NCBI RefSeq assembly: GCF_000143415.4
Contig: NW_003314342.1
Coordinates: 333,569-397,568 of the forward strand
Length of the DNA: 64,000 nucleotides
Direction of reading: 5' to 3'
Source: Selaginella moellendorffii
Taxonomy: Eukaryota; Plantae; Lycopodiophyta
This document shows, one piece after another, positions 17,872 through 32,993 of the stretch. The position numbers and the translations under genes were made by a program. The notes under the pieces are model-generated. The model ran no database searches. It saw nothing but the letters and a program-made list of their open reading frames with translations, and was not told the DNA's origin. Within the stretch, counting starts at the first letter, position 1; each line of letters starts with the position of its first letter.

Positions 17872-18351
17872 ATGGCGGAGGAGGGGAGCGGCGGCAGCAG
17901 GGGCAGGATGGTCGATTCCGTCGGGAGGCCAATCGCAAAGCCTCGCCCTCACCGCTGCGACGATCGGCTCGAGGACTTCATCAATGTGCGTAAGCTGCTG
18001 CCCGCATTCTCGCTTGTCAGGGTTTTCTTCTGCTTCTTCTTTCACGATTTTAGCTCTTCTTTGTTGCATTGTGGTGATCAGTCGCTTTTTGAGGGCTGGA
18101 GCTGTGTGCCTGGGCGTGCAAAACTTTGGTGGCGATGCATGCGCTCTGAGCCTGGGTATTTTCTCGATCTCTAGTGCTGTCTTTTTTTCTCTGTTTTTTC
18201 TTCTGTGATGAATGTGATAAGCTTGCAGTCAAGAGCCAGATGATCCTTACGTTTACCACGAACCGAAGCAGCGTAAATTTTTTCTTTCTTCATTTTCTTT
18301 TGAACCGTCTTGACATTGTTGCTTTCTTCTTATGGTTTTGCAGGTAAATAG
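17872..18351 (+). CDS. Small 79-aa plant protein resembling the At3g52230 family; exons 17872-17985, 18082-18155, 18229-18272, 18344-18351
   Basis: Manual GT-AG splicing with consistent phases gives MAEEGSGGSRGRMVDSVGRPIAKPRPHRCDDRLEDFINSLFEGWSCVPGRAKLWWRCMRSEPGQEPDDPYVYHEPKQRK*. The SLFEG..VPG..KL..RCMRS.PG.EP pattern matches that family from memory; no search was run. Confidence 0.7.
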
Positions 18352-18379
18352 TAGATCACAATGTCAGCTTTAGTAGAAG

Positions 18380-21300
18380 ATGACGCAAATGATAGAAGTT
18401 TGGCCAACAAAGACGATTCTACGAGCTTGTAGCTACAAGAATCGGCGCTGCATGAGCTCGGTGTCGTTAGTCGCACACCGCAGGTCTCTACTCTTTAGTG
18501 GTTTTGGAGAGTTTAGATGTAGTTCCCCAAAATTGTGGTGGCTATCTGCGACGCTTGCTGGTTAGTACATCATTTTTACTTTGACAGGTCATAACCAGTT
18601 CTTTATCCAGGGCGTAGCTGCCGGTTTTGTACTTCGTCAGGTGATTCATCGAATGCATTCGTAAGTCCTATTATTTTTTCTTTTTTTTTGTAAGAGAATT
18701 TCTTTCACAGAAGATCGACGATTCGAAGCTTGTGAAAGCTATTGTCTACGAGGCTACAAAGGGCTTTTGCAATTCCGCTGGGAGTACAAGAAAGTAAATT
18801 GTTCTTTCTTTGTTTTTCTGATCTCTTACTTACTTCCAGGTTTAGCGACTTTCTACGATCGCAGCTTTCAATACATGCTGAGAGAGGAGAAAGAGACTTG
18901 AAAAGTTTTGAAGTCATTCAAAATTTGGCCCAAGATGCTCAGTCTTACGGTCAAATGGACTGTGAGCAGAGAATTCAACTCCTTGACAGGGTATTTCACT
19001 TGAAAACTATGATGTTTTGAGTGAATGTGAATGTACAGGTCGCGCAGATCCAGGGGTTTTCTTGCGCCAGAGATATTGTTGATCACGAGATTGCAGTGGT
19101 CGAAGCTTCTCAAGATCTTACTCATGAGAACTGCGTGAAAAGGGATGAAGGTATTTCATCTTCCCAAGCTTTAACTGAGAACCCTTCGATTGTGTATGGA
19201 AGCAGTGAGCCAGTTGATCTTTTTAGCTCAAAAAAGATCGTGGTTCGCCCAGCGAAGCAAAAGCCGGATGTTAACAAAGCTATACAAAGTTCAAGCAAAT
19301 CACTACTGGATGTCGAGTTACCTCCAAGCAAAGAACAAAGCCAGCCATCGCCATCCCAACGTACTAAGGGCGTGTCCAGTTTGCTATATCAGGCCTCAGA
19401 GACCAGAAGTATTGATACAGAGAACGAGAGATGGAAACTGGACACGCTAATAAGCGACATGAAATGCTTCACGCCATATCAACGATCGCAGCTACAAGAA
19501 AACGGCTTTTACACGGTAAACGTCGCATTCTCCTCGAAAGTGTCTTACATGTTTTTTTTTAGGCTCGTAGTCTACTCAACCATTTTCCTCGTGCTCATGT
19601 GAGCTTTGAAAGCCCCACCGACACTTTGGAGGATGGACAATCTGTGGCATTGTTTGGGACAATTGTTATGACCAGGTAAAACTATTGTGACACGTCTTCA
19701 AAAACTTACTACCGGACACATTTCTGCAGGGCCTCGAAAATCAAAGACACTCTGGCTATGCTTGAAGTCATTGTGAACTGTAAGATTGCCCAGGAATGCC
19801 TAAGGCCTTGTGATGACGAAGTTGATGAAAATACCGTATTCCTGCACATCAAGAGGTTCTTTCAAGGCCCACGTTTTACATCGAGCTGGTTTTTGAACAA
19901 AACGGCCTCGGGTTACCCTGAAGGTTCCAAAGCAGCAGTTAGTGGCAAGGTATTGCATCGCACACTTTGATATTGCTTAACAGTTTCTTCTCACCTTACA
20001 GGTGAAAGCGATGAATAGAAAATCTCACTTTTTGCTAAAAGAGTATGCGGTTAAAGTTATTGAGGGCGAGGATTTTGACCAGCTTCGAAACGACGGAGAA
20101 GCATATCCTGTGTACTCATCGAAGGGTCTTTTAAATCCGAAGAAGATACAAGCGTTTATACAGAGGTAATTAACGCAAACCAGTGCAGCTGATTTTTGAA
20201 AGCTACATAGGTTGCTGAAAGGATTACCGACGGATATAGATCCTCTTCCCACTGAAATGCGAGACAAGTACGATCTTCTGAGTATAGAACAGGTTTTTCT
20301 TTATTAACTTTGTTGTTTCTACTTACATGCCTCCATTTCAGGCCTATTCCACCCTTCATCAGCCTACTAATCTCCAAGGGGCAAATGTAGCTAGGCGAAG
20401 AATCGTGTTTGACGACTACTTCTATCTTCAGGTCTAGTAAGATTCTAGTGAACCATGAGGCTGATGATCATATATATCTTACAGTTGGCGTTTCTTCTTC
20501 AAAGAAACTGCTTGAGAGGAAGTACCGTAAACAATGAGCTGGAAATGGATAAGTGGTCATCTCTAAGTCTGAAAGTCTTGAATGCGCTTCCTTTCAAGTT
20601 GACTGCTGGGCAGATCAAGGCTGCCTCTGAGATCATGTGGGATTTGCGTCAGCAAGCTCCAATGAGCCGTCTCTTACAGGTGCATATTTTGTTCCTTGCT
20701 TTGGTATGCTTCTGACTTCACGTTCATTGCAGGGAGATGTTGGCTGTGGGAAGACTATAGTGGCATTTCTCGCACTTCTTGACGTGGTCAGTTCAGGATA
20801 CCAGGTATGTTTCATGAAATTCGTCACCTTTCTATACTAATACCGTATCGCGCAGGCAGCTCTTATGGCACCCACGGATTTTGTAGTCTCGCAACATTAC
20901 AAACAGTTCCTGTCCTGGCTTGAAGTGCTGGATGAGAAGGATAGACCAAAGATAGCGCTTCTTTCCGGGTCTTTAAGTGCGGGTGAAGCTCGTCTAGTCC
21001 GAGAAGTGAGATTTACTCAAAGCGTTTATTTTTCTGCTTATTACATTTCTTTTCCTTCCAGGGTATCGCCAACAGAGAAATCTCTCTAATTCTCGGTACG
21101 CACGCTCTTATATCCAATTCGACTAATTTCCCGGCGCTGGGACTGGCTGTTATTGACGAGCAGCATAGGTTTGGTGTTGGACAGAGAGATCGTTTGAAAA
21201 CGGTACGCATTTTCTTAAATGAAGGCTGATCTTCTGAGATAGCGTTGTTGACAGGCACACGCTTCTGAGGCCGTCGAGCCGGACCTGGACGATGCTGATC

Positions 21301-27126: not shown

Positions 27127-27869
27127 TAATAAATGAATGTTTTTTTTTCTGCTCCTCCTGCGTTCGTGCTGGGAGATTGGAACGCTAGAGCATTCCCTTT
27201 TTTTTTTCCAAAAGCACAGTGAATTGCCACCACGATCAGTCAGAGAACCTCTTCTTTCTCACATACAGGAACATTTTTCTCTTGCAAAAGTTCTCCAGGA
27301 AAGATAAAACACTTGGAGCTTTCTTTTGCCGCTCAGGAGGTAGGAAAATTCGCGGCTGCAGCGGCAGAGGAGGAGCTGTGGTAGAAGTATAGCAAGGTAC
27401 TATGCTTTCTTCTACAACTATTTGAACTATATTTTCTTCTACAAAGTGATTGAAAGAACTTACTGCAAATGCCAAAGCTGGCATTTTTGTATGCACCATT
27501 GTCTACATCCAGTCATTCTCATTGCCATCATCTTCTTCCACTTGTATCCCAGCTTGATTCTTCATTGTGTTCTTCTTCTTTTCTTTGTATTTCCTCAGTA
27601 CTTCTCGATCGTATCTTGTAGTATATTCTGGGATCTATGCCTCTTAGTGTACCTTTTCCTACAAGGATAAAGCCACCAAACTGCCGCCCTAGCAACAATC
27701 CCTTCGCCATGCCGCAAGTTAAAGTGGTCTTCGACTACGACAGACGAAGAGAAACACTCAAAGTCCGCATCTCATCAGGTTCATCGCAAGATCCTCTCAC
27801 TCGCAGCCAGCTGCGAGAACTCGCATCGGAACTCCAACAGAATGCGTCAGCCTCCTGGACGCTGCTCGG

Positions 27870-27995
27870 CCAAAAGCCAACCGCCAGCGGAGTCATCCTC
27901 AGGTACCAAAAGTCAACCGCCAGCAGAGGCATCCTCACGTATCGCGGGAAAAGTCAACGCCCAGCAAGACGAAGAAAGTCAACCAGGCGCATCTT
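27870..27995. repeat. Degenerate tandem repeat, about 36-bp unit, 3-4 copies
   Basis: caaaagccaaccgccagcggagtcatcctc / caaaagtcaaccgccagcagaggcatcctc / aaaagtcaacgcccagcaaga / aaagtcaaccaggcgcatct. Confidence 0.7.
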
Positions 27996-28110
27996 ACCAT
28001 AGAATCTATCTAGCTACTTGTTGTAGCGAACAAAGAAAAGAACCACTATAATCTTCGTAAACAATTTATATACATAGTATTACAGCCATGATAGAATCGC
28101 TGGATTTTTC

Positions 28111-28776
28111 TTAGAATCTCGCCCAGCATCTGGTACATTCCGCCATGCAATCCCCCTTGCAGTCCACATTGTAGCCCAAAACTTGTGGCTTGCGAAGCAC
28201 CAGGCTTTTCAGCGTCCTCCCGCTGATCCCCCACGTAACATCCAACACCCCGACGTTGCCCTGGATCTCCTCCTCGAGCTTGCATCCCAGGATCTCGGGG
28301 AACTTCTTCATCAAACCCGAGACCTCCGCGTCCGACAGCCCCAGGCTCATGAGATACTCCACTTTCCCGGCCACCTCCTCCACAGCCGGGACGGATTTCT
28401 CCTTCCCCTCCCCCCAGTATGGCGATTTGAGGTGCCCCGACGACTTCCCGATCACTCTATCCGCGTCTTCGATCGAGAGGCCCAGCTCCATGAGCTTGCC
28501 GCGAGAGGCCTCCCATCTCTCGCGGAGCTCTGGAGGTAACGATCCCTGGAGATGGTCTTGATCTTGATCGCTGCCGCTGGCTTTGATGGTCACTAGTCGT
28601 CGTCTTCTTCTCGACGAACTACCTTGGAGTAGAACTCTACCTCTTTCCGGAGCGCCCACGATCCTGGGCTGCGCAATTGTCGATCCAAAACCGTGGTGGA
28701 GCTGCAGAGCAAGATCCGTGAGCTCATCCAGGAGAGAAGTAAAGCTTACCGGCAGAGCGCGCAAGAGCTCTCCCAT
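28111..28776 (-). CDS. Short mTERF-family protein with transit-like N-terminus; probable 48-nt in-frame intron 28749-28702
   Basis: VEYLMSLGLSDAEVSGLMKKFPEILGCKLEEEI..LVLRKPQVLGYNVDCKGDCMAECTRCWARF. Intron reads gtaagc...ctctgcag. Confidence 0.9.
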   Translation of the reverse strand: MGELLRALPVSFTSLLDELTDLALQLHHGFGSTIAQPRIVGAPERGRVLLQGSSSRRRRRLVTIKASGSDQDQDHLQGSLPPELRERWEASRGKLMELGLSIEDADRVIGKSSGHLKSPYWGEGKEKSVPAVEEVAGKVEYLMSLGLSDAEVSGLMKKFPEILGCKLEEEIQGNVGVLDVTWGISGRTLKSLVLRKPQVLGYNVDCKGDCMAECTRCWARF

Positions 28777-28785
28777 CCCGGCGCA

Positions 28786-31700
28786 CTAAAGCCCTATAGC
28801 GGTAAATTAGACCCAAGATCGATCGTTAGAGCTCGAGAAGAAGAAAAGTTTGATCTTACCGTGCGATGCTCCGAAGTAATTGGACTGGCTATGGATGAGC
28901 TCCAGCCGCCGCAAGATCAGCCCGGCGGCTCTCCGCGTCTTTGGATCGGCCGTTTGAGCAGCGTAGATGACGTGCATTTGAGCGGATGGGCCATACTGCG
29001 CGCAGTAGTCGGGGTGACTGAACAGCCGCTCCACGATGGCCAGCGCGTACCGCTGGGCGTCACGCCCGCCGCTACTCACCGCCGCTATCACGGCGCTCAG
29101 CCCCTTGGCTTTGTCGATGGCGTGGCAGCCCTCGACTGTACCAGCCGGATAAGCCTCCGAGGTGCCGTCGGCGGTATCCTCGTCCAGTACGCCCGTCAGC
29201 GTCGCCAGTGCCGCCAGTGCCGCTGCGGCGCCGCCGGCGGTATCGGCGGCGTCCGCCTTGACCGCGTCCTTGAGCAGCGCCACCAGCGGCACCACCGCGT
29301 CGGCTTCCACGAGGCAGAAGGTGTGCCGCGCGGTACACTCGCCGCCGTGGACCCGGCAGCACCGGCTCGGTCCGCGCGGCGCCAGCCACGGCAGGCACAG
29401 GTACACGACGCTCCTGCACGACTCGTCCTGTTTTCGCCGCTTTTGCTTGCTGCGGCTCTCGCTCAAGCTCCAGCTGCTCGACGAGAACTCTGCCAGGCAC
29501 CGCGCGGCACGCCGCCGCGTGAGCATGCTCCTCCCGGGCTCCAGCAGCTGCACCAGCCGCTCGATCATCCCCGCCTCGGCCAGCTTCTTCTGCGTCTCCA
29601 CCCCAAGCTTCGCGAACTTTAGAACGATGCCCACCGCCGCCTCGGTCGTCGCAGCGTCCTGGGAGGCGTCCATCACCAGCGCCGCCACTACGTGAAGTAG
29701 CCCCTTGTCTCCATCTTGGTGGTGATGATCCAGAGCGCTCCTCACGACTCCATTCCCCTCCATGCTCGCGATGATCCCCAGCATGGACGTTCTCTCCGGG
29801 TCCTCGGACAGGTTCTTCACGAGCTCGGCTATGATCCCGGGCTCCTCTCGCATCGCCGCGGACGCTTCCTGGCTGGATTCCTTGCTCAGCAGGCAAAACA
29901 GCTCCATTGCGTGCCGCCTTACTTCCACCACCATAGCTGGAGTTTTCGAAGCCGCGCTGCCCGGAGTCGACGTAGCCGGGTTCTTGAGGAGCGGAAGAAG
30001 TGTTTGCAGCGCCCTGTGCTCGCAGAGCTTTGCTCTCGTAAAGCCTCCGATGTTCTTCCCGTTGGCCAAGCCGAGGAGAGTGCTCAAGACGTGACTTTGG
30101 ACGCCAGCAGCCGTGGGCGAGCCCATGAATTGCAAGAACTCGTAGATGTAGATCTCGAGCTGGTTCATTGTGGCTTCGTCTTCGTCGCTCCAGGCATCAC
30201 CAGCGATCTTAGAGAGATCGGCCAGTATCCGGGCAGCGCCAACTTTTATCTCCTCCACGGACTTGACAGAGGTGAGTTTGTGTTCCATCAGCCTGAAGCC
30301 GTGCAAAGTGAGGACTGTCTCGGCGATGCCAGGCACGGATGTGAGGTTTTGGAGAGCACCTAGAGCTGCTTCGTTTTCTTCTCGCCGGAAGCTTTCGATC
30401 ATTTTCAGCAGCGACACCAGCACGTCCTCCGTTGCAAGTGACGTTTTGCTCGAGTCTGGCAAGTGCATGGCAGCGAGCGCGTTTGCCATGAGAATTCTCG
30501 ATTCCATGGATCCTGCAAGAGCATTTTCATCAAAGATGTGAAAGAACATCAAAACGAAGTGAATTACCTTCAACGAGCCTGTTTGCCAAAGGCCGCATGA
30601 GATTGGCCTCGGCCATTATCACAACATTTTCATCGCTGCTTGGGACATTCTCCAGGATGGCCGTCACGTTCGAGTTCACGTCCTCGTCCTCGCAGCCGAG
30701 TAAAGTTACCAGAAACACCACCGCACCTTGTGCGTGGCTGATCAGCTCCGCGGTGCTGGGATTCTCCGACAAGATCTTCATCACCAACACAGCTTCTCCC
30801 AAGTCTTCCTTTTGCCGAGTGAGGCTAAAAACCAGCTGCTCAACTATACCGGCCTTCACCATTGATTCCTAAAAGAAGCAAAATGATCAGTAGCTTATAA
30901 TTGGCAGACTACTTAGAACAAGGAAGAACCAGGCAAAACTGTCGATCAAAATATGCAAAGCCGCTCAAGAGAAAATCCTTGAAAGCACAAGCAAAGAAGT
31001 GAAAAGAAAAAGCAAGAGTGAAAGATCACAAGCTGCATGATCATGTCGCAAGCAAAGAAAGTGGAAGTTTGCAAAACGGTGATCATGTGCAAATCTCATT
31101 AAAAAAAAGCCTTCACAAGCACAAGCAACGCGATGAGAAAAGCAAAAGCAAGAGTGAAAAATCACAAGCTGTCTCAAAAGGTAGATTTTTCTCGCAAGCA
31201 AGGAACGTGAAAGTTGAAAGCTATCTTACCTGGTTTTCCACGTTGTCCCGAGCAAGCACCGCGAGCGCCGCCAGGGCCTCCTTGCGTAGAATCACGGCAT
31301 CCCGCGCGTCATGCAGAAGCTTCACCATCGGTCCAATCAGCCCAATGGTGCCAACTTTGTATTTGTTGAGCGGCTCCTCCTCACACACCGCGCGGACGTC
31401 CCGCATGGTCCGCACGTCTGTGTCGGAACAGCGCGGCTCTCCGAGAAGGCACCGCGCGGCACAGTGGAGCCGGGCCTCGAAGTTCCTCTCCCTCCACTCG
31501 GCAATGGACTGCTTTAGCGCGAAGTTGGATTTCATCTGCGTGGTGGGGAGCTCCTCGCCCATCACCGGGCATCGCGTGTTCCCCTCGGCAAACCATCGCT
31601 CGATCGCCTCGCGCTCGTACGTCTGCCCCGAGGCGATCTGGACGGGGTCGCGCATCACGTCGCGAGTGATCGGGCAGATGAATGGCTGCAAGGGCAGCAT

Positions 31701-32468
31701 TGGCGCGTCCCTGCCGCTGATCGAGAGCGACGCCATGAGCTGCTTCATCCGCTTGGCCTGTTCTCGCTCGCAATCCTCGTCGCCCTCGATGGCATCCCCC
31801 CTGGAAGATCGAAGAGCCCGGTCGAGAACCAGCAAGAACTGCTCCAGATAGAGAGCGTGGACCTTCCCGCCGCGCGCCTCCGCGGCCGATCGCTCGCACC
31901 ACAGCTTCTCCACCTCGTCGACGAATCCCTGGCTAGTCATCTCCATCCCCACGCCCTCGGCGATCTGCCGCGCCAGCCTCCGGCACAGCGCCGTGTCGAT
32001 CACGATTGTGTCGAGCATGCCCTCCTCGAGCGAATCGATGAGCGCTTCGTCGTCGCCGGTGGGGCGAAATCCCTCGCTAAGCAGCTCCAACAGCGAGCTA
32101 TCCACCTTCGCCGTCCCGCCCAGTGCCTCGATTCCCCGCCGCAGCCTCTTCCCCGATTCTTGAAGCTCCGCCATGATCTTGGGGCTACACATGAGGAGAT
32201 AGAGCGATGATCGGCCCTTGTAACCCTGGAGGAGATTCTCCTCACTGCTCAGCTCCTCCTCGAGCTGCTGTGCCTGGATTTCGCCACTGTCGGCAAGCCG
32301 CGACAGGAACAGCGCCAGGCCCTCGAGGCAATCCGCGAGCTGTGCGAATGCCCGCTGCGCTGGATTGGGGCGCTTGCCGGGCGACGGCTGCTGCACGGCA
32401 GTGCTGCCGCTGCTGAGATCTCGCGCCGCCACGGCCAGCGCCATGACCCTCTTGCGCATCCCTTCCAT
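28786..32468 (-). CDS. U-box/ARM-repeat E3 ligase, SAUL1/PUB43-44-like; exons about 32468-31230, 30868-30568, 30513-28860, 28793-28786
   Basis: U-box LPLQPFICPITRDVMRDPVQIASGQTYEREAIERWF, ENVVIMAEANLMRPL, CRVHGGECTARHTFCLVEADAVVPLV, LIHSQSNYF. The unspliced stop is at 28807; with the 66-nt intron 28859-28794 the stop is 28788-28786. Confidence 0.92.
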
Positions 32469-32595
32469 CGCGCATCCGCGATTTCCTAGCTAGCCCTAGC
32501 TTACGCACAGCTCTCCCACTGCTTGACCTAGGTCCTGTACTTTCACCCAGTGTTCCACTCCAATCAAAACACTTTCGCGCGGGTCAATGCACGGC

Positions 32596-32694
32596 GAATA
32601 TTCCAATGGCATAAAAACGATCCGAATATTCTAATGACATAAAGGGTTAGAATATTCTAATCGCTTGAAAGGATCTTTTTGAAACGGAATATAC
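32596..32694. promoter_or_regulatory. Cluster of four GNATATNC (P1BS-type) motifs, three also matching the GAAnnTTC heat-shock-element core
   Basis: gaatattc at 32596, 32624 and 32650; gaatatac at 32687. Confidence 0.55.
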
Positions 32695-32741
32695 TGAGGA
32701 ACAATAACGCTTGTCACCGCCAAGTCAGCATCCGTGAAGCC

Positions 32742-32993
32742 ATGGCAGCGCGGGCTCACGAGTGCCCATTCACAGACTCGAAGTGCTCGAGGTATGACGA
32801 TTGCCTCCAATGTGGATTCCGGAGCTGCGCGAAATCGGGGAGGATTTGCGCTCCGGGCCAGCGCTGCTCGACTTGCTTGTACAAGAAAGCGGTGCTCAGG
32901 CTGCAAGACGAGCTTGGCGTGAGCGAGAGCGAGGCGACTGTGGAGGCGCACCAGAGGGGGATCCTGTCTGGGGCCCCGGGCGAGCAGCGATGA
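32742..32993 (+). CDS. Hypothetical 83-aa cysteine-rich protein (8 Cys)
   Basis: ATG in good context (gccATGg) and GC-rich coding-like sequence: MAARAHECPFTDSKCSRYDDCLQCGFRSCAKSGRICAPGQRCSTCLYKKAVLRLQDELGVSESEA... No family recognised. Confidence 0.45.
   Translation: MAARAHECPFTDSKCSRYDDCLQCGFRSCAKSGRICAPGQRCSTCLYKKAVLRLQDELGVSESEATVEAHQRGILSGAPGEQR

What the first reader, a model, noticed from the sequence alone, without database searches (positions are those of the whole stretch)
28702..28860. Bridge exon 1: PUB44-like ligase stop and mTERF start lie 9 nt apart in one 44-nt exon (candidate spliced dicistronic mRNA)
Seen on the minus strand: after ...GASH comes a strong donor (G|GTAAGA, 28859), a 66-nt intron with ctaac/ctaat branch-like sites and an acceptor (ctatag, 28794). 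The next exon (28793-28750) reads GG CTT TAG tgcgccggg ATG GGA GAG..., then a second canonical 48-nt intron whose removal gives mTERF a transit-like N-terminus. Even without splicing, the stop-to-ATG gap is only 30 nt, with no room for a poly(A) site and a promoter. Established: nuclear polycistronic mRNAs are reported in green algae but regarded as rare in land plants. Inference: one transcript encodes both an E3 ligase and an organellar gene-expression factor, and the second ORF would need reinitiation.
Basis: partly seen in the sequence, partly recalled or inferred. Interest (0 to 1): 0.8.

Follow-up and report, generated by a model that had tools for sequence, protein, structure and literature searches.

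The report
Spikemoss ligase and mTERF share mRNA
In the spikemoss Selaginella moellendorffii, a large U-box ubiquitin-ligase gene and a small chloroplast-type mTERF gene are spliced into one RNA, with the first gene's stop 9 bases before the second's start inside a shared 44-base exon; this probably builds in a two-gene mRNA, which is unusual for a land plant, but single molecules and translation of the second gene are not yet shown.

Summary
On the minus strand the U-box/ARM (PUB) frame runs ...GASH, donor G|GTAAGA (28859), 66-nt intron, acceptor AG (28794). The 44-nt exon (28793-28750) reads GG CTT TAG, 9 nt, ATG. A 48-nt intron (28749-28702) follows, then the rest of a 205-aa mTERF ORF.

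Spliced RNA contigs from four runs in four studies remove both introns. No laid contig covers either intron. In all four runs a contig runs from PUB exon 3 into the mTERF ORF, and one 3,919-nt contig covers both ORFs. PUB has no stop before the shared exon. There is no poly(A)-like motif before the mTERF stop. Contig depths are alike across both genes.

The dominant PUB mRNA therefore carries the whole mTERF ORF. Leaky scanning is excluded: ORF1 is 3,201 nt and 49 AUGs precede ORF2.

Not shown:
- single molecules covering both ORFs;
- absence of a minor mTERF start site inside PUB exon 3 or the shared exon;
- translation of ORF2.

The closest known case is the intergenic-splicing read-through transcripts of Arabidopsis. 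There they are rare by-products degraded by nonsense-mediated mRNA decay (NMD); here the form looks constitutive. The pairing is not ancestral, since Marchantia and Arabidopsis orthologues stand alone.

This scan has already noted the same kind of locus elsewhere in this genome, so this is one more instance.

The parts
32469..32522 (-). 5' UTR of the unit (minimum extent); the only 5' end region seen
   Evidence: Contigs end at 32488, 32511 and 32522 in three runs (table 8). One out-of-frame ATG lies before the PUB ATG.
31230..32468 (-). PUB exon 1 coding part (ATG 32468); holds the U-box
   Evidence: Pfam U-box PF04564, 62.6 bits against a cut-off of 21.4. ATG context GCGCGATGG.
30869..31229 (-). 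PUB intron 1 (361 nt, GT..AG)
   Evidence: Skipped in 4 of 4 runs. Ends checked. Partly retained in run X1: a contig covers 30841-31258 at depth 7.8.
30568..30868 (-). PUB exon 2 (Arm repeat region)
30513..30567 (-). PUB intron 2 (55 nt, GT..AG)
   Evidence: Skipped in 4 of 4 runs. Ends checked.
28860..30512 (-). PUB exon 3 (Arm repeats; the conserved C-terminus ...SNYF is followed by 4 extra codons, GASH, and one base of the next codon)
   Evidence: Arm PF00514. Homologue P0081 ends ...SSYF*, aligned to ...SNYF. There is no stop in frame before the donor. The last 684 nt hold only 3 ATGs.
28794..28859 (-). Intron A (66 nt, GT..AG): joins the PUB coding exon to the shared exon; if retained, PUB would end at TAA 28809-28807
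   Evidence: Skipped in 4 of 4 runs, and no laid contig covers it. There are 3 haplotype differences in 66 nt, the highest density in the locus. It holds no AATAAA-like motif.
28750..28793 (-). Shared 44-nt exon: last two PUB codons plus TAG (28788-28786), a 9-nt spacer (28785-28777), and the mTERF ATG (28776) with 8 further codons
   Evidence: It is identical in both haplotypes and in 4 RNA runs. ATG context GCCGGGATGG. TAG and ATG are in one frame.
28702..28749 (-). Intron B (48 nt, GT..AG, phase 0 after mTERF codon 9)
   Evidence: Skipped in 4 of 4 runs. The Arabidopsis orthologue model also has a phase-0 intron after codon 9.
28111..28701 (-). mTERF exon 2: 196 codons plus TAA (28113-28111); mTERF12-like protein ending ...CTRCWARF
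   Evidence: Pfam mTERF PF02536, 34.6-35 bits against a cut-off of 23.1. 79 orthologues across land plants at 41-59% identity.
28040..28110 (-). 3' UTR and the only poly(A)-signal-like region of the unit (TATAAA at 28070; GC falls to 0.30)
   Evidence: Contigs end at 28040 and 28056. Motif and GC scan.

Best explanation
The locus is a built-in, spliced read-through (structurally dicistronic) transcription unit.

How the RNA is made:
- Transcription starts about 50 nt or more upstream of the PUB ATG (near 32500).
- Four GT-AG introns are removed.
- The RNA is polyadenylated only about 70 nt after the mTERF stop (near 28040).

The mature mRNA is about 3.95 kb. It carries ORF1 (a 1066-aa U-box/ARM E3 ligase), the TAG, a 9-nt spacer, and ORF2 (205 aa). 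ORF2 is the orthologue of the small, conserved, chloroplast-nucleoid mTERF12-type protein.

The PUB ORF has outgrown its conserved ...YF end by six codons. It can only terminate in the exon that also holds the mTERF start, so every complete PUB mRNA carries the mTERF ORF. These steps are shown at contig level.

The following steps are inferred. PUB is translated by ordinary scanning. mTERF is made at low efficiency by post-termination reinitiation at the good-context AUG 9 nt after the stop. It may be supplemented by a minor shorter RNA. I put the structural part at about 0.7 and reinitiation as the main source of mTERF protein at about 0.35.
For: - Both bridging introns are spliced in 4 of 4 RNA runs from 4 studies. 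No contig covers either intron, because the bin depths equal contig depth times the exonic fraction.
- Contigs cross from PUB exon 3 into the mTERF ORF in all four runs: 28157-29218, 28056-29682, 28176-29228, and one of 3,919 nt covering 28040-32488.
- Contig depths change smoothly across the two genes: 15.2, 20.6, 24.1 in X1; 281, 387, 403, 434 in X14; 27.5, 37.8, 26.8 in X2.
- The PUB frame has no stop before the shared exon. The GenBank PUB model ends at the same TAG.
- No AATAAA-like motif, TATA box or exact telo-box lies between 29400 and the mTERF stop. The AT-rich 3' region begins only after 28100.
- The ATG at 28776 is the only start that gives the full conserved protein plus a 71-residue, Arg/Ser-rich presequence like those of the orthologues.
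- It is the only Selaginella hit for this family, so the ORF must be expressed.
- Precedent for reinitiation 6-10 nt after a normal-length ORF in the green lineage: PMC5144980.
Against: - Contigs do not prove single molecules and cannot show 5' ends, as the tool itself warns.
- An mTERF-only RNA starting in PUB exon 3 or in the shared exon would add no new words. One starting in intron A would make a short tip that assemblers clip.
- The 532-nt ATG-free stretch, with only 3 ATGs in the last 684 nt before ORF2, is what a private mTERF leader would look like (P = 0.004 by whole-CDS codon shuffle, 0.06 by local shuffle).
- Reinitiation after a 1066-codon ORF is expected to be very inefficient.
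- In Arabidopsis, second ORFs of read-through RNAs were rarely translated and the RNAs are NMD targets.
- No TURBS-like UGGGA motif and no unusual RNA structure lie near the junction.
Confidence: 0.5

Rival explanations
1. These are overlapping but separate transcription units. mTERF keeps its own compact promoter inside the 3' part of the PUB coding exon, with its start site in exon 3 or in the shared exon. That gives a monocistronic mRNA whose 5' UTR contains intron A, and this mRNA is the translated one. The PUB mRNA merely reads through mTERF because it lacks its own terminator, so the mTERF ORF serves as its 3' UTR.
For: - The last 684 nt before the mTERF ATG hold only 3 ATGs, with a 532-nt ATG-free run.
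- From a start site in that run, the first AUG opens a 25-codon uORF that ends 74 nt before the mTERF AUG. That layout is friendly to reinitiation.
- In two runs the contig that holds mTERF is 8-17% deeper than the next PUB contig, which leaves room for a minor extra RNA.
- Most Arabidopsis read-through loci also have monocistronic RNAs and start sites for the second gene.
- Another follow-up in this scan (s1-349007) read tightly packed Selaginella genes as separate promoters.
Against: - No step in contig depth appears at the gene boundary in any of four studies. In X2 the mTERF-containing contig is lower than the PUB contig.
- There is no TATA box and no exact telo-box. The only near match is TAGGGCTT, which lies across the acceptor.
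- The upstream DNA is real coding sequence, homologous to P0081 up to ...YF.
- Intron A's donor lies 11 nt after the conserved PUB end, so the mTERF first exon would have to overlap PUB codons.
Confidence: 0.37
2. The read-through RNA is a non-productive by-product, as in Arabidopsis. ORF2 on it is silent and the RNA is an NMD target. On this reading the mTERF ORF is either dispensable or decaying in this species.
For: Arabidopsis read-through RNAs are degraded by NMD and their ORF2 is rarely translated. After the PUB stop, the RNA would have a 3' UTR of about 700 nt.
Against: - The spliced joint form is the only form seen, at depths up to about 430.
- The PUB gene has no other way to end.
- The mTERF ORF is intact, 54-59% identical to orthologues over the conserved part, keeps the invariant C-terminal motif, and is the only Selaginella hit.
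- The exon junction after the PUB stop lies only 36 nt downstream, under the roughly 50-nt rule for junction-triggered NMD (the rule is from my own knowledge).
Confidence: 0.05
3. Stop-codon read-through of the in-frame TAG makes a PUB-mTERF fusion protein of about 1275 aa.
For: TAG and ATG are in one frame, separated by three sense codons.
Against: - Being in frame is expected by chance in one case out of three.
- The context UAG-UGC-GCC is not the known plant read-through motif UAG-CAR-YYA (my own knowledge).
- A transit-like presequence placed internally would be useless.
- TAG is kept in both haplotypes and in all RNA runs.
Confidence: 0.03
4. The result is an assembly artefact: the contigs are chimeras of two unrelated RNAs, or derive from a processed DNA copy.
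For: De Bruijn contigs can join overlapping transcripts. The runs are only guessed to be RNA.
Against: - The same four introns are removed in four runs from four studies.
- The joints have GT..AG ends.
- A 44-nt exon flanked by two used splice sites cannot be reached from either side except by splicing.
- The genomic haplotypes both keep the introns.
Confidence: 0.03

Closest known systems
Intergenic-splicing read-through (polycistronic) transcripts of Arabidopsis (Kurihara et al. 2022, PMC9768141)
   Same: Two same-strand protein-coding genes lie on one RNA. [quoted passage not shown] Organelle-targeted proteins are common among the partners. ORF2 lies far behind many AUGs.
   Different: - In Arabidopsis such RNAs are about 0.06% of transcripts, are NMD targets, mostly coexist with monocistronic RNAs, and ORF2 is rarely translated.
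- Here the joined form is the only one seen in four RNA data sets.
- Here the first gene's stop codon exists only in the shared exon.
- Here the intron is too small (66 nt) and too plain to have held a poly(A) site.
Exclusively polycistronic nuclear loci of green algae (Gallaher et al. 2021, PMC7896298; Duenas et al. 2025, PMC11892635)
   Same: The arrangement looks constitutive rather than occasional. The inter-ORF distance is very short. Partners often act in organelles.
   Different: - Algal ORF1 is short (median about 290-360 nt), has a weak Kozak-like context and few AUGs before ORF2, and translation is by leaky scanning.
- Here ORF1 is 3,201 nt, has a purine at -3 and G at +4, and 49 AUGs precede ORF2.
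- The algal loci were shown by full-length Iso-Seq and proteomics; this one was not.
Synthetic stop-6-to-10-nt-start bicistronic constructs in Chlamydomonas (Onishi and Pringle 2016, PMC5144980)
   Same: A normal-length ORF1 is followed within 6-10 nt by the ORF2 AUG, with no IRES. ORF2 is expressed, presumably by post-termination reinitiation.
   Different: Those constructs are engineered, in an alga, with an ORF1 of a few hundred codons and selection for ORF2 activity. This locus is natural, in a vascular plant, and has a 1066-codon ORF1.
CDC26-TTM3 bicistronic transcript of land plants (Lorenzo-Orts et al. 2019; known to me, cited in papers found, not read here)
   Same: It is a conserved natural plant mRNA with two protein-coding ORFs.
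   Different: There ORF1 is a small uORF-like gene. Here ORF1 is the large one, and the pairing is not conserved outside Selaginella.

Membership tests
Dicistronic nuclear mRNA (general definition) | Two complete, non-overlapping protein ORFs on one mature mRNA molecule, shown by full-length reads | tested here: inconclusive
   One 3,919-nt contig covers both ORFs, and three more contigs cross the boundary. Contigs are not molecules, and no raw or long reads were available.
Dicistronic nuclear mRNA (general definition) | Both ORFs translated into separate proteins | not testable with these tools
   No Ribo-seq or proteome data. Only the ORF's integrity and conservation were shown.
Green-algal leaky-scanning bicistrons | Short ORF1, weak ORF1 Kozak-like context, and AUG depletion before ORF2 | tested here: not met
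   ORF1 is 3,201 nt, its context is GCGCGATGG, and 49 ATGs precede ORF2.
Green-algal leaky-scanning bicistrons | Very short inter-ORF distance compared with colinear monocistronic genes | tested here: met
   9 nt after splicing, 30 nt unspliced.
Arabidopsis-type intergenic-splicing read-through transcripts | An intron spliced between the 3' region of gene 1 and the 5' region of gene 2 on a transcript overlapping both | tested here: met
   Intron A (28794-28859) is spliced in 4 of 4 runs.
Arabidopsis-type intergenic-splicing read-through transcripts | A rare isoform beside monocistronic mRNAs of both genes; NMD-sensitive | tested here: inconclusive
   No unspliced or alternative-end contig was seen even at about 430-fold depth. 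However, contigs drop rare forms and cannot show start sites. NMD is not testable here.
Viral-type termination-reinitiation (TURBS-dependent) | A UGGGA-type motif complementary to 18S rRNA, some tens of nt upstream of a closely spaced stop and start | tested here: not met
   The stop and start are 9 nt apart, but there is no TGGGA in the 150 nt of spliced RNA before the ATG. The fold is no different from shuffled sequences.
mTERF family (Pfam PF02536), mTERF12-type subgroup | An mTERF domain above the Pfam cut-off, and the subgroup's conserved C-terminal end GYNVDCKGDC.A.CTRCW.RF | tested here: met
   34.6-35 bits against a cut-off of 23.1. The C-terminal motif is shared with orthologues from Marchantia, Adiantum, Diphasiastrum and Arabidopsis. 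Equating the Arabidopsis protein with At4g09620 rests on its two GASA neighbours and on my memory.
Plant U-box/ARM E3 ligases (PUB-ARM) | A U-box domain plus Armadillo repeats | tested here: met
   U-box 62.6 bits against a cut-off of 21.4; Arm 30.7 bits against 20.6.
PUB44/SAUL1 subgroup | Orthology to AtPUB42-44 | not tested
   Word searches with exon 3 returned only a Selaginella paralogue and one unnamed 303-aa fragment. Full-length relatives fall outside the length filter, and the joined protein was not searched.

The most novel reading that the evidence does not exclude
Selaginella moellendorffii expresses a conserved chloroplast gene-expression factor only from a constitutive dicistronic mRNA, behind a 3.2-kb E3-ligase ORF. 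Ribosomes would reinitiate 9 nt after terminating a 1066-codon ORF. That would be a cellular use of post-termination reinitiation after a long ORF. It would also be one member of a genome-wide class of intron-bridged gene pairs in this vascular plant.
Probability: 0.3. Interest if true: 0.85.

Novelty: new variant of a known kind. Interest (0 to 1): 0.6.

Why it matters
Eukaryotic nuclear mRNAs are taken to encode one protein. The known plant exceptions are either a tiny first ORF or rare, degraded read-through by-products.

In this locus the first gene cannot even terminate without the exon that starts the second gene, and no other RNA form is detectable. If the mTERF protein is really made from this RNA, ribosomes must reinitiate after a very long ORF. 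That would be a new mode of gene expression in a land plant, and a natural design for two-gene constructs.

If instead a hidden promoter sits inside the ligase coding sequence, the locus shows how far promoter and terminator loss can go in a compact plant genome. It would also show that gene annotation there systematically truncates second genes: the GenBank mTERF model is a 134-aa fragment without a start.

Either way, the locus couples a cytosolic ubiquitin ligase with a plastid nucleoid factor at the transcriptional level.

Tried and rejected
- **Synteny.** The mTERF orthologues of Marchantia (L002) and Arabidopsis (L003) have no U-box gene upstream and have kilobases of spacer. RNA contigs of two other plants (L004-L006) carry the mTERF alone, with 58-125 nt leaders. 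The Diphasiastrum protein was not on record. The pairing is therefore not ancient, and no other Selaginella species could be reached with these tools.
- **PUB relatives.** Two word searches with exon 3 were swamped by low-complexity words. They gave only a paralogue (P0080) and one distant fragment (P0081). The paralogue locus L007 matches only the first 315 of 550 exon-3 residues and has no mTERF. The 51-aa ORF behind P0081 is not an mTERF.
- **Promoter and terminator motifs.** There is no exact telo-box, TATA box or AATAAA-like motif between 29400 and 28113. The telo-box test was prompted by scan note s1-349007.
- **RNA structure and TURBS motif at the junction.** Nothing was found.
- **Haplotype comparison (98.8% identity).** There are too few differences to measure selection on ORF2: 3 synonymous and 2 non-synonymous.
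- **Literature.** Searches found no report of nuclear polycistronic mRNAs in Selaginella.
- **Joined proteins.** The spliced 1066-aa and 205-aa proteins were built only inside scripts, for lengths and ends.
- **Large protein search.** It was not used, because the claim does not rest on it.
Full report
**Source.** The window is Selaginella moellendorffii. The mTERF exon is 99% identical to SELMODRAFT_58739. The stretch 27900-32565 aligns at 98.8% to GenBank scaffold GL377608.1, so it is probably the other haplotype.

**Observation.** Reading the minus strand confirms every base of the finding.
- The U-box/ARM frame ends ...TTC GGA GCA TCG CAC G, followed by GTAAGA (donor GT at 28859-28858).
- The 66-nt intron has CTAAC and CTAAT motifs and ends in TATAG (AG at 28795-28794).
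- The next 44 nt (28793-28750) read GG CTT TAG TGCGCCGGG ATG GGA GAG CTC TTG CGC GCT CTG CCG.
- A 48-nt GT..AG intron follows (28749-28702).
- Unspliced, the ligase frame would stop at TAA 28809-28807, 30 nt before the ATG.

**RNA evidence.** The single reads call laid Logan contigs of four runs from four studies on 27700-32900.
- All four runs skip exactly the two small introns. They also skip the two other PUB introns (55 nt and 361 nt), all with GT..AG ends. This shows the runs are RNA.
- In the bins that contain the small introns, the depth equals contig depth times the exonic fraction in every run. No laid contig therefore covers either intron.
- Contigs cross the gene boundary in all four runs: 28157-29218 (X1), 28056-29682 (X2), 28176-29228 (X14) and 28040-32488 (X3). 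The X3 contig is 3,919 nt and holds both complete ORFs.
- Breaks between contigs coincide with allelic differences.
- Contig 5' ends lie at 32488-32522 and 3' ends at 28040-28056.
- Mean contig depths run smoothly from the PUB 5' part to the mTERF-containing contig: 15.2, 20.6, 24.1 in X1; 281, 387.5, 403, 434 in X14; 27.5, 37.8, 26.8 in X2. The tool warns that such depths are a poor measure. I use them only to say there is no large step.

**Gene model.** Joining the exons in a script (boundaries rechecked) gives a 3,953-nt RNA.
- It has a 54-nt leader, then ORF1 of 1066 aa (MEGMRK...NYFGASHGL), TAG, 9 nt, ORF2 of 205 aa, and 71 nt of 3' UTR.
- The GenBank PUB model has the same length and the same end point (L001 4048-7730).
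- The GenBank mTERF model is only a 134-aa fragment without a start.
- Pfam finds a U-box (62.6 bits) and Arm repeats in ORF1, and an mTERF domain (34.6 bits, cut-off 23.1) in ORF2.

**What ORF2 is.**
- It has 79 relatives across land plants at 41-59% identity. They are 200-240 aa long and all end in GYNVDCKGDC.A.CTRCW.RF.
- The Arabidopsis member lies next to two GASA genes. From memory that makes it At4g09620, mTERF12, a chloroplast-nucleoid protein (PMC5509804; PMC3471360).
- The Selaginella protein has 71 residues before the conserved WEASRG motif, against about 80 in the others. These residues are rich in Arg, Ser, Gly and Leu.
- There is no other in-frame ATG before the conserved part, so 28776 is the start.
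- The Arabidopsis model also has a phase-0 intron after codon 9. The shared exon is therefore probably the ancestral first coding exon of the mTERF gene.
- This is the only Selaginella hit for the family.

**What happened to ORF1.** The one distant homologue found for the PUB C-terminal third (P0081, 32% identity over 284 residues) ends ...LHDQSSYF-stop. That aligns to ...IHSQSNYF of Selaginella.
- The Selaginella ORF continues GGA GCA TCG CAC G where the homologue has TGA. It crosses intron A and ends two codons into the mTERF exon.
- The ligase has thus lost its own stop, and it has no terminator.
- No AATAAA-like motif occurs between the PUB stop and the mTERF stop. GC drops to 0.30 only after 28100, where TATAAA sits 15-30 nt before the contig ends.

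**Inference on RNA structure.**
- The PUB frame is open until the shared exon.
- That exon is reached only by splicing intron A.
- The only continuation seen from that exon is splicing of intron B into the mTERF ORF.
- The dominant complete PUB mRNA therefore carries the whole mTERF ORF. This follows from the contigs and the sequence, with the reservation that assemblers drop rare forms.
- Not excluded is an additional mTERF-only RNA whose 5' end lies in PUB exon 3 or inside the shared exon (no new words), or in intron A (a tip shorter than 66 nt, which assemblers clip).
- A 532-nt ATG-free stretch, and only three ATGs in the last 684 nt before ORF2, fit such a private leader. The evidence is weak: P = 0.004 by whole-CDS codon shuffle but 0.06 by local shuffle, and the region is GC-rich.
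- I found no TATA box and no exact telo-box. The only near match is TAGGGCTT, which lies over the acceptor.

**Translation.**
- Leaky scanning is excluded for the long RNA. 49 ATGs precede ORF2, and the PUB AUG has G at -3 and +4.
- The ORF2 AUG also has a good context (GGGATGG).
- Read-through of the in-frame TAG would give a fusion with an internal presequence, and the context is not a known read-through motif.
- No TURBS-like motif or special fold is present.
- What remains is post-termination reinitiation 9 nt downstream, or a minor monocistronic RNA.
- In Chlamydomonas, an AUG placed 6-10 nt after a normal ORF is expressed without an IRES (PMC5144980). In Arabidopsis read-through RNAs tested in Nicotiana, seven of eight second ORFs were hardly translated (PMC9768141).
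- The exon junction after the PUB stop is only 36 nt downstream. By my own knowledge of the roughly 50-nt rule, that should not trigger junction-dependent NMD.

**Comparison with known systems.**
- The anatomy matches Arabidopsis intergenic-splicing read-through transcripts: 271 loci, 158 with such introns. The status does not match. Those are about 0.06% of transcripts, are NMD targets, and mostly accompany monocistronic mRNAs.
- It differs from green-algal polycistrons in the defining features of short ORF1, weak start context and AUG depletion.
- The pairing is lineage-specific. Marchantia and Arabidopsis orthologues and RNA contigs from other plants are stand-alone.

**Earlier notes of this scan (leads, not evidence).**
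- The same window holds a second 'bridge exon' note at 18229-18720.
- Other pieces of this genome hold over twenty 'dicistronic' notes.
- Several follow-ups reached the same state: spliced contigs run through both genes, and single molecules are unproven.
- One follow-up argued for separate promoters marked by telo-boxes. I tested the telo-box idea here and it is not met.

**Verdict.** The structural reading, a constitutive spliced two-gene RNA, is likely (about 0.7). Translation of mTERF from that RNA is open (about 0.35). The main rival is a hidden internal start site. I class it as a new variant of a known kind, of moderately high interest, and as one instance of a pattern that seems to recur in this genome.

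Noticed in passing
There a small At3g52230-like gene ends 28 nt before the RECG start, inside a shared exon. That would be the same architecture 10 kb away.
   Followed up: no
window 28860-29543 (minus strand): A 532-nt stretch without any ATG lies in the last part of the PUB coding exon, and only 3 ATGs occur in the 684 nt before the mTERF ATG. The whole-CDS codon shuffle gives P = 0.004 and the local shuffle P = 0.06. This could mark a private mTERF leader or simply reflect GC-rich, Ala/Gly-rich insertions.
   Followed up: partly
window 28870-28872: GGA stands where the one homologue found (P0081, locus L008 1598-1600) has its TGA stop, directly after the conserved ...YF end. The Selaginella ligase ORF is extended by six codons into the shared exon.
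   Followed up: partly
window 30841-31258: Run X1 has a contig that retains PUB intron 1 (361 nt) at depth 7.8, against 20.6 for the spliced form. This indicates partial intron retention or pre-mRNA.
   Followed up: no
window 27700-28155: Run X14 has a separate contig at about 6% of the main depth. It continues at least 340 nt beyond the main 3' end and carries the other haplotype's letters, including a 5-nt insertion also present in L001. This may be weak read-through past the mTERF poly(A) site, or allele-specific 3' end use.
   Followed up: no
L007 8001-11667 (GL377633.1): The paralogue SELMODRAFT_424553 matches only the first 315 of the 550 exon-3 residues (76-86% identity). It has no Pfam hit on record and no mTERF downstream, so it is probably a truncated or decaying copy of the ligase gene.
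   Followed up: partly
window 28786-32468: Between the two haplotypes, the ligase ORF has 18 non-synonymous and 12 synonymous codon differences. This suggests relaxed constraint on this fast-evolving PUB.
   Followed up: no
L001 8001-8402: The GenBank mTERF model is a 134-aa fragment without a start codon. Presumably gene callers cannot place a start 9 nt behind another gene's stop. Second genes of such pairs may be systematically truncated or missing in the annotation.
   Followed up: no
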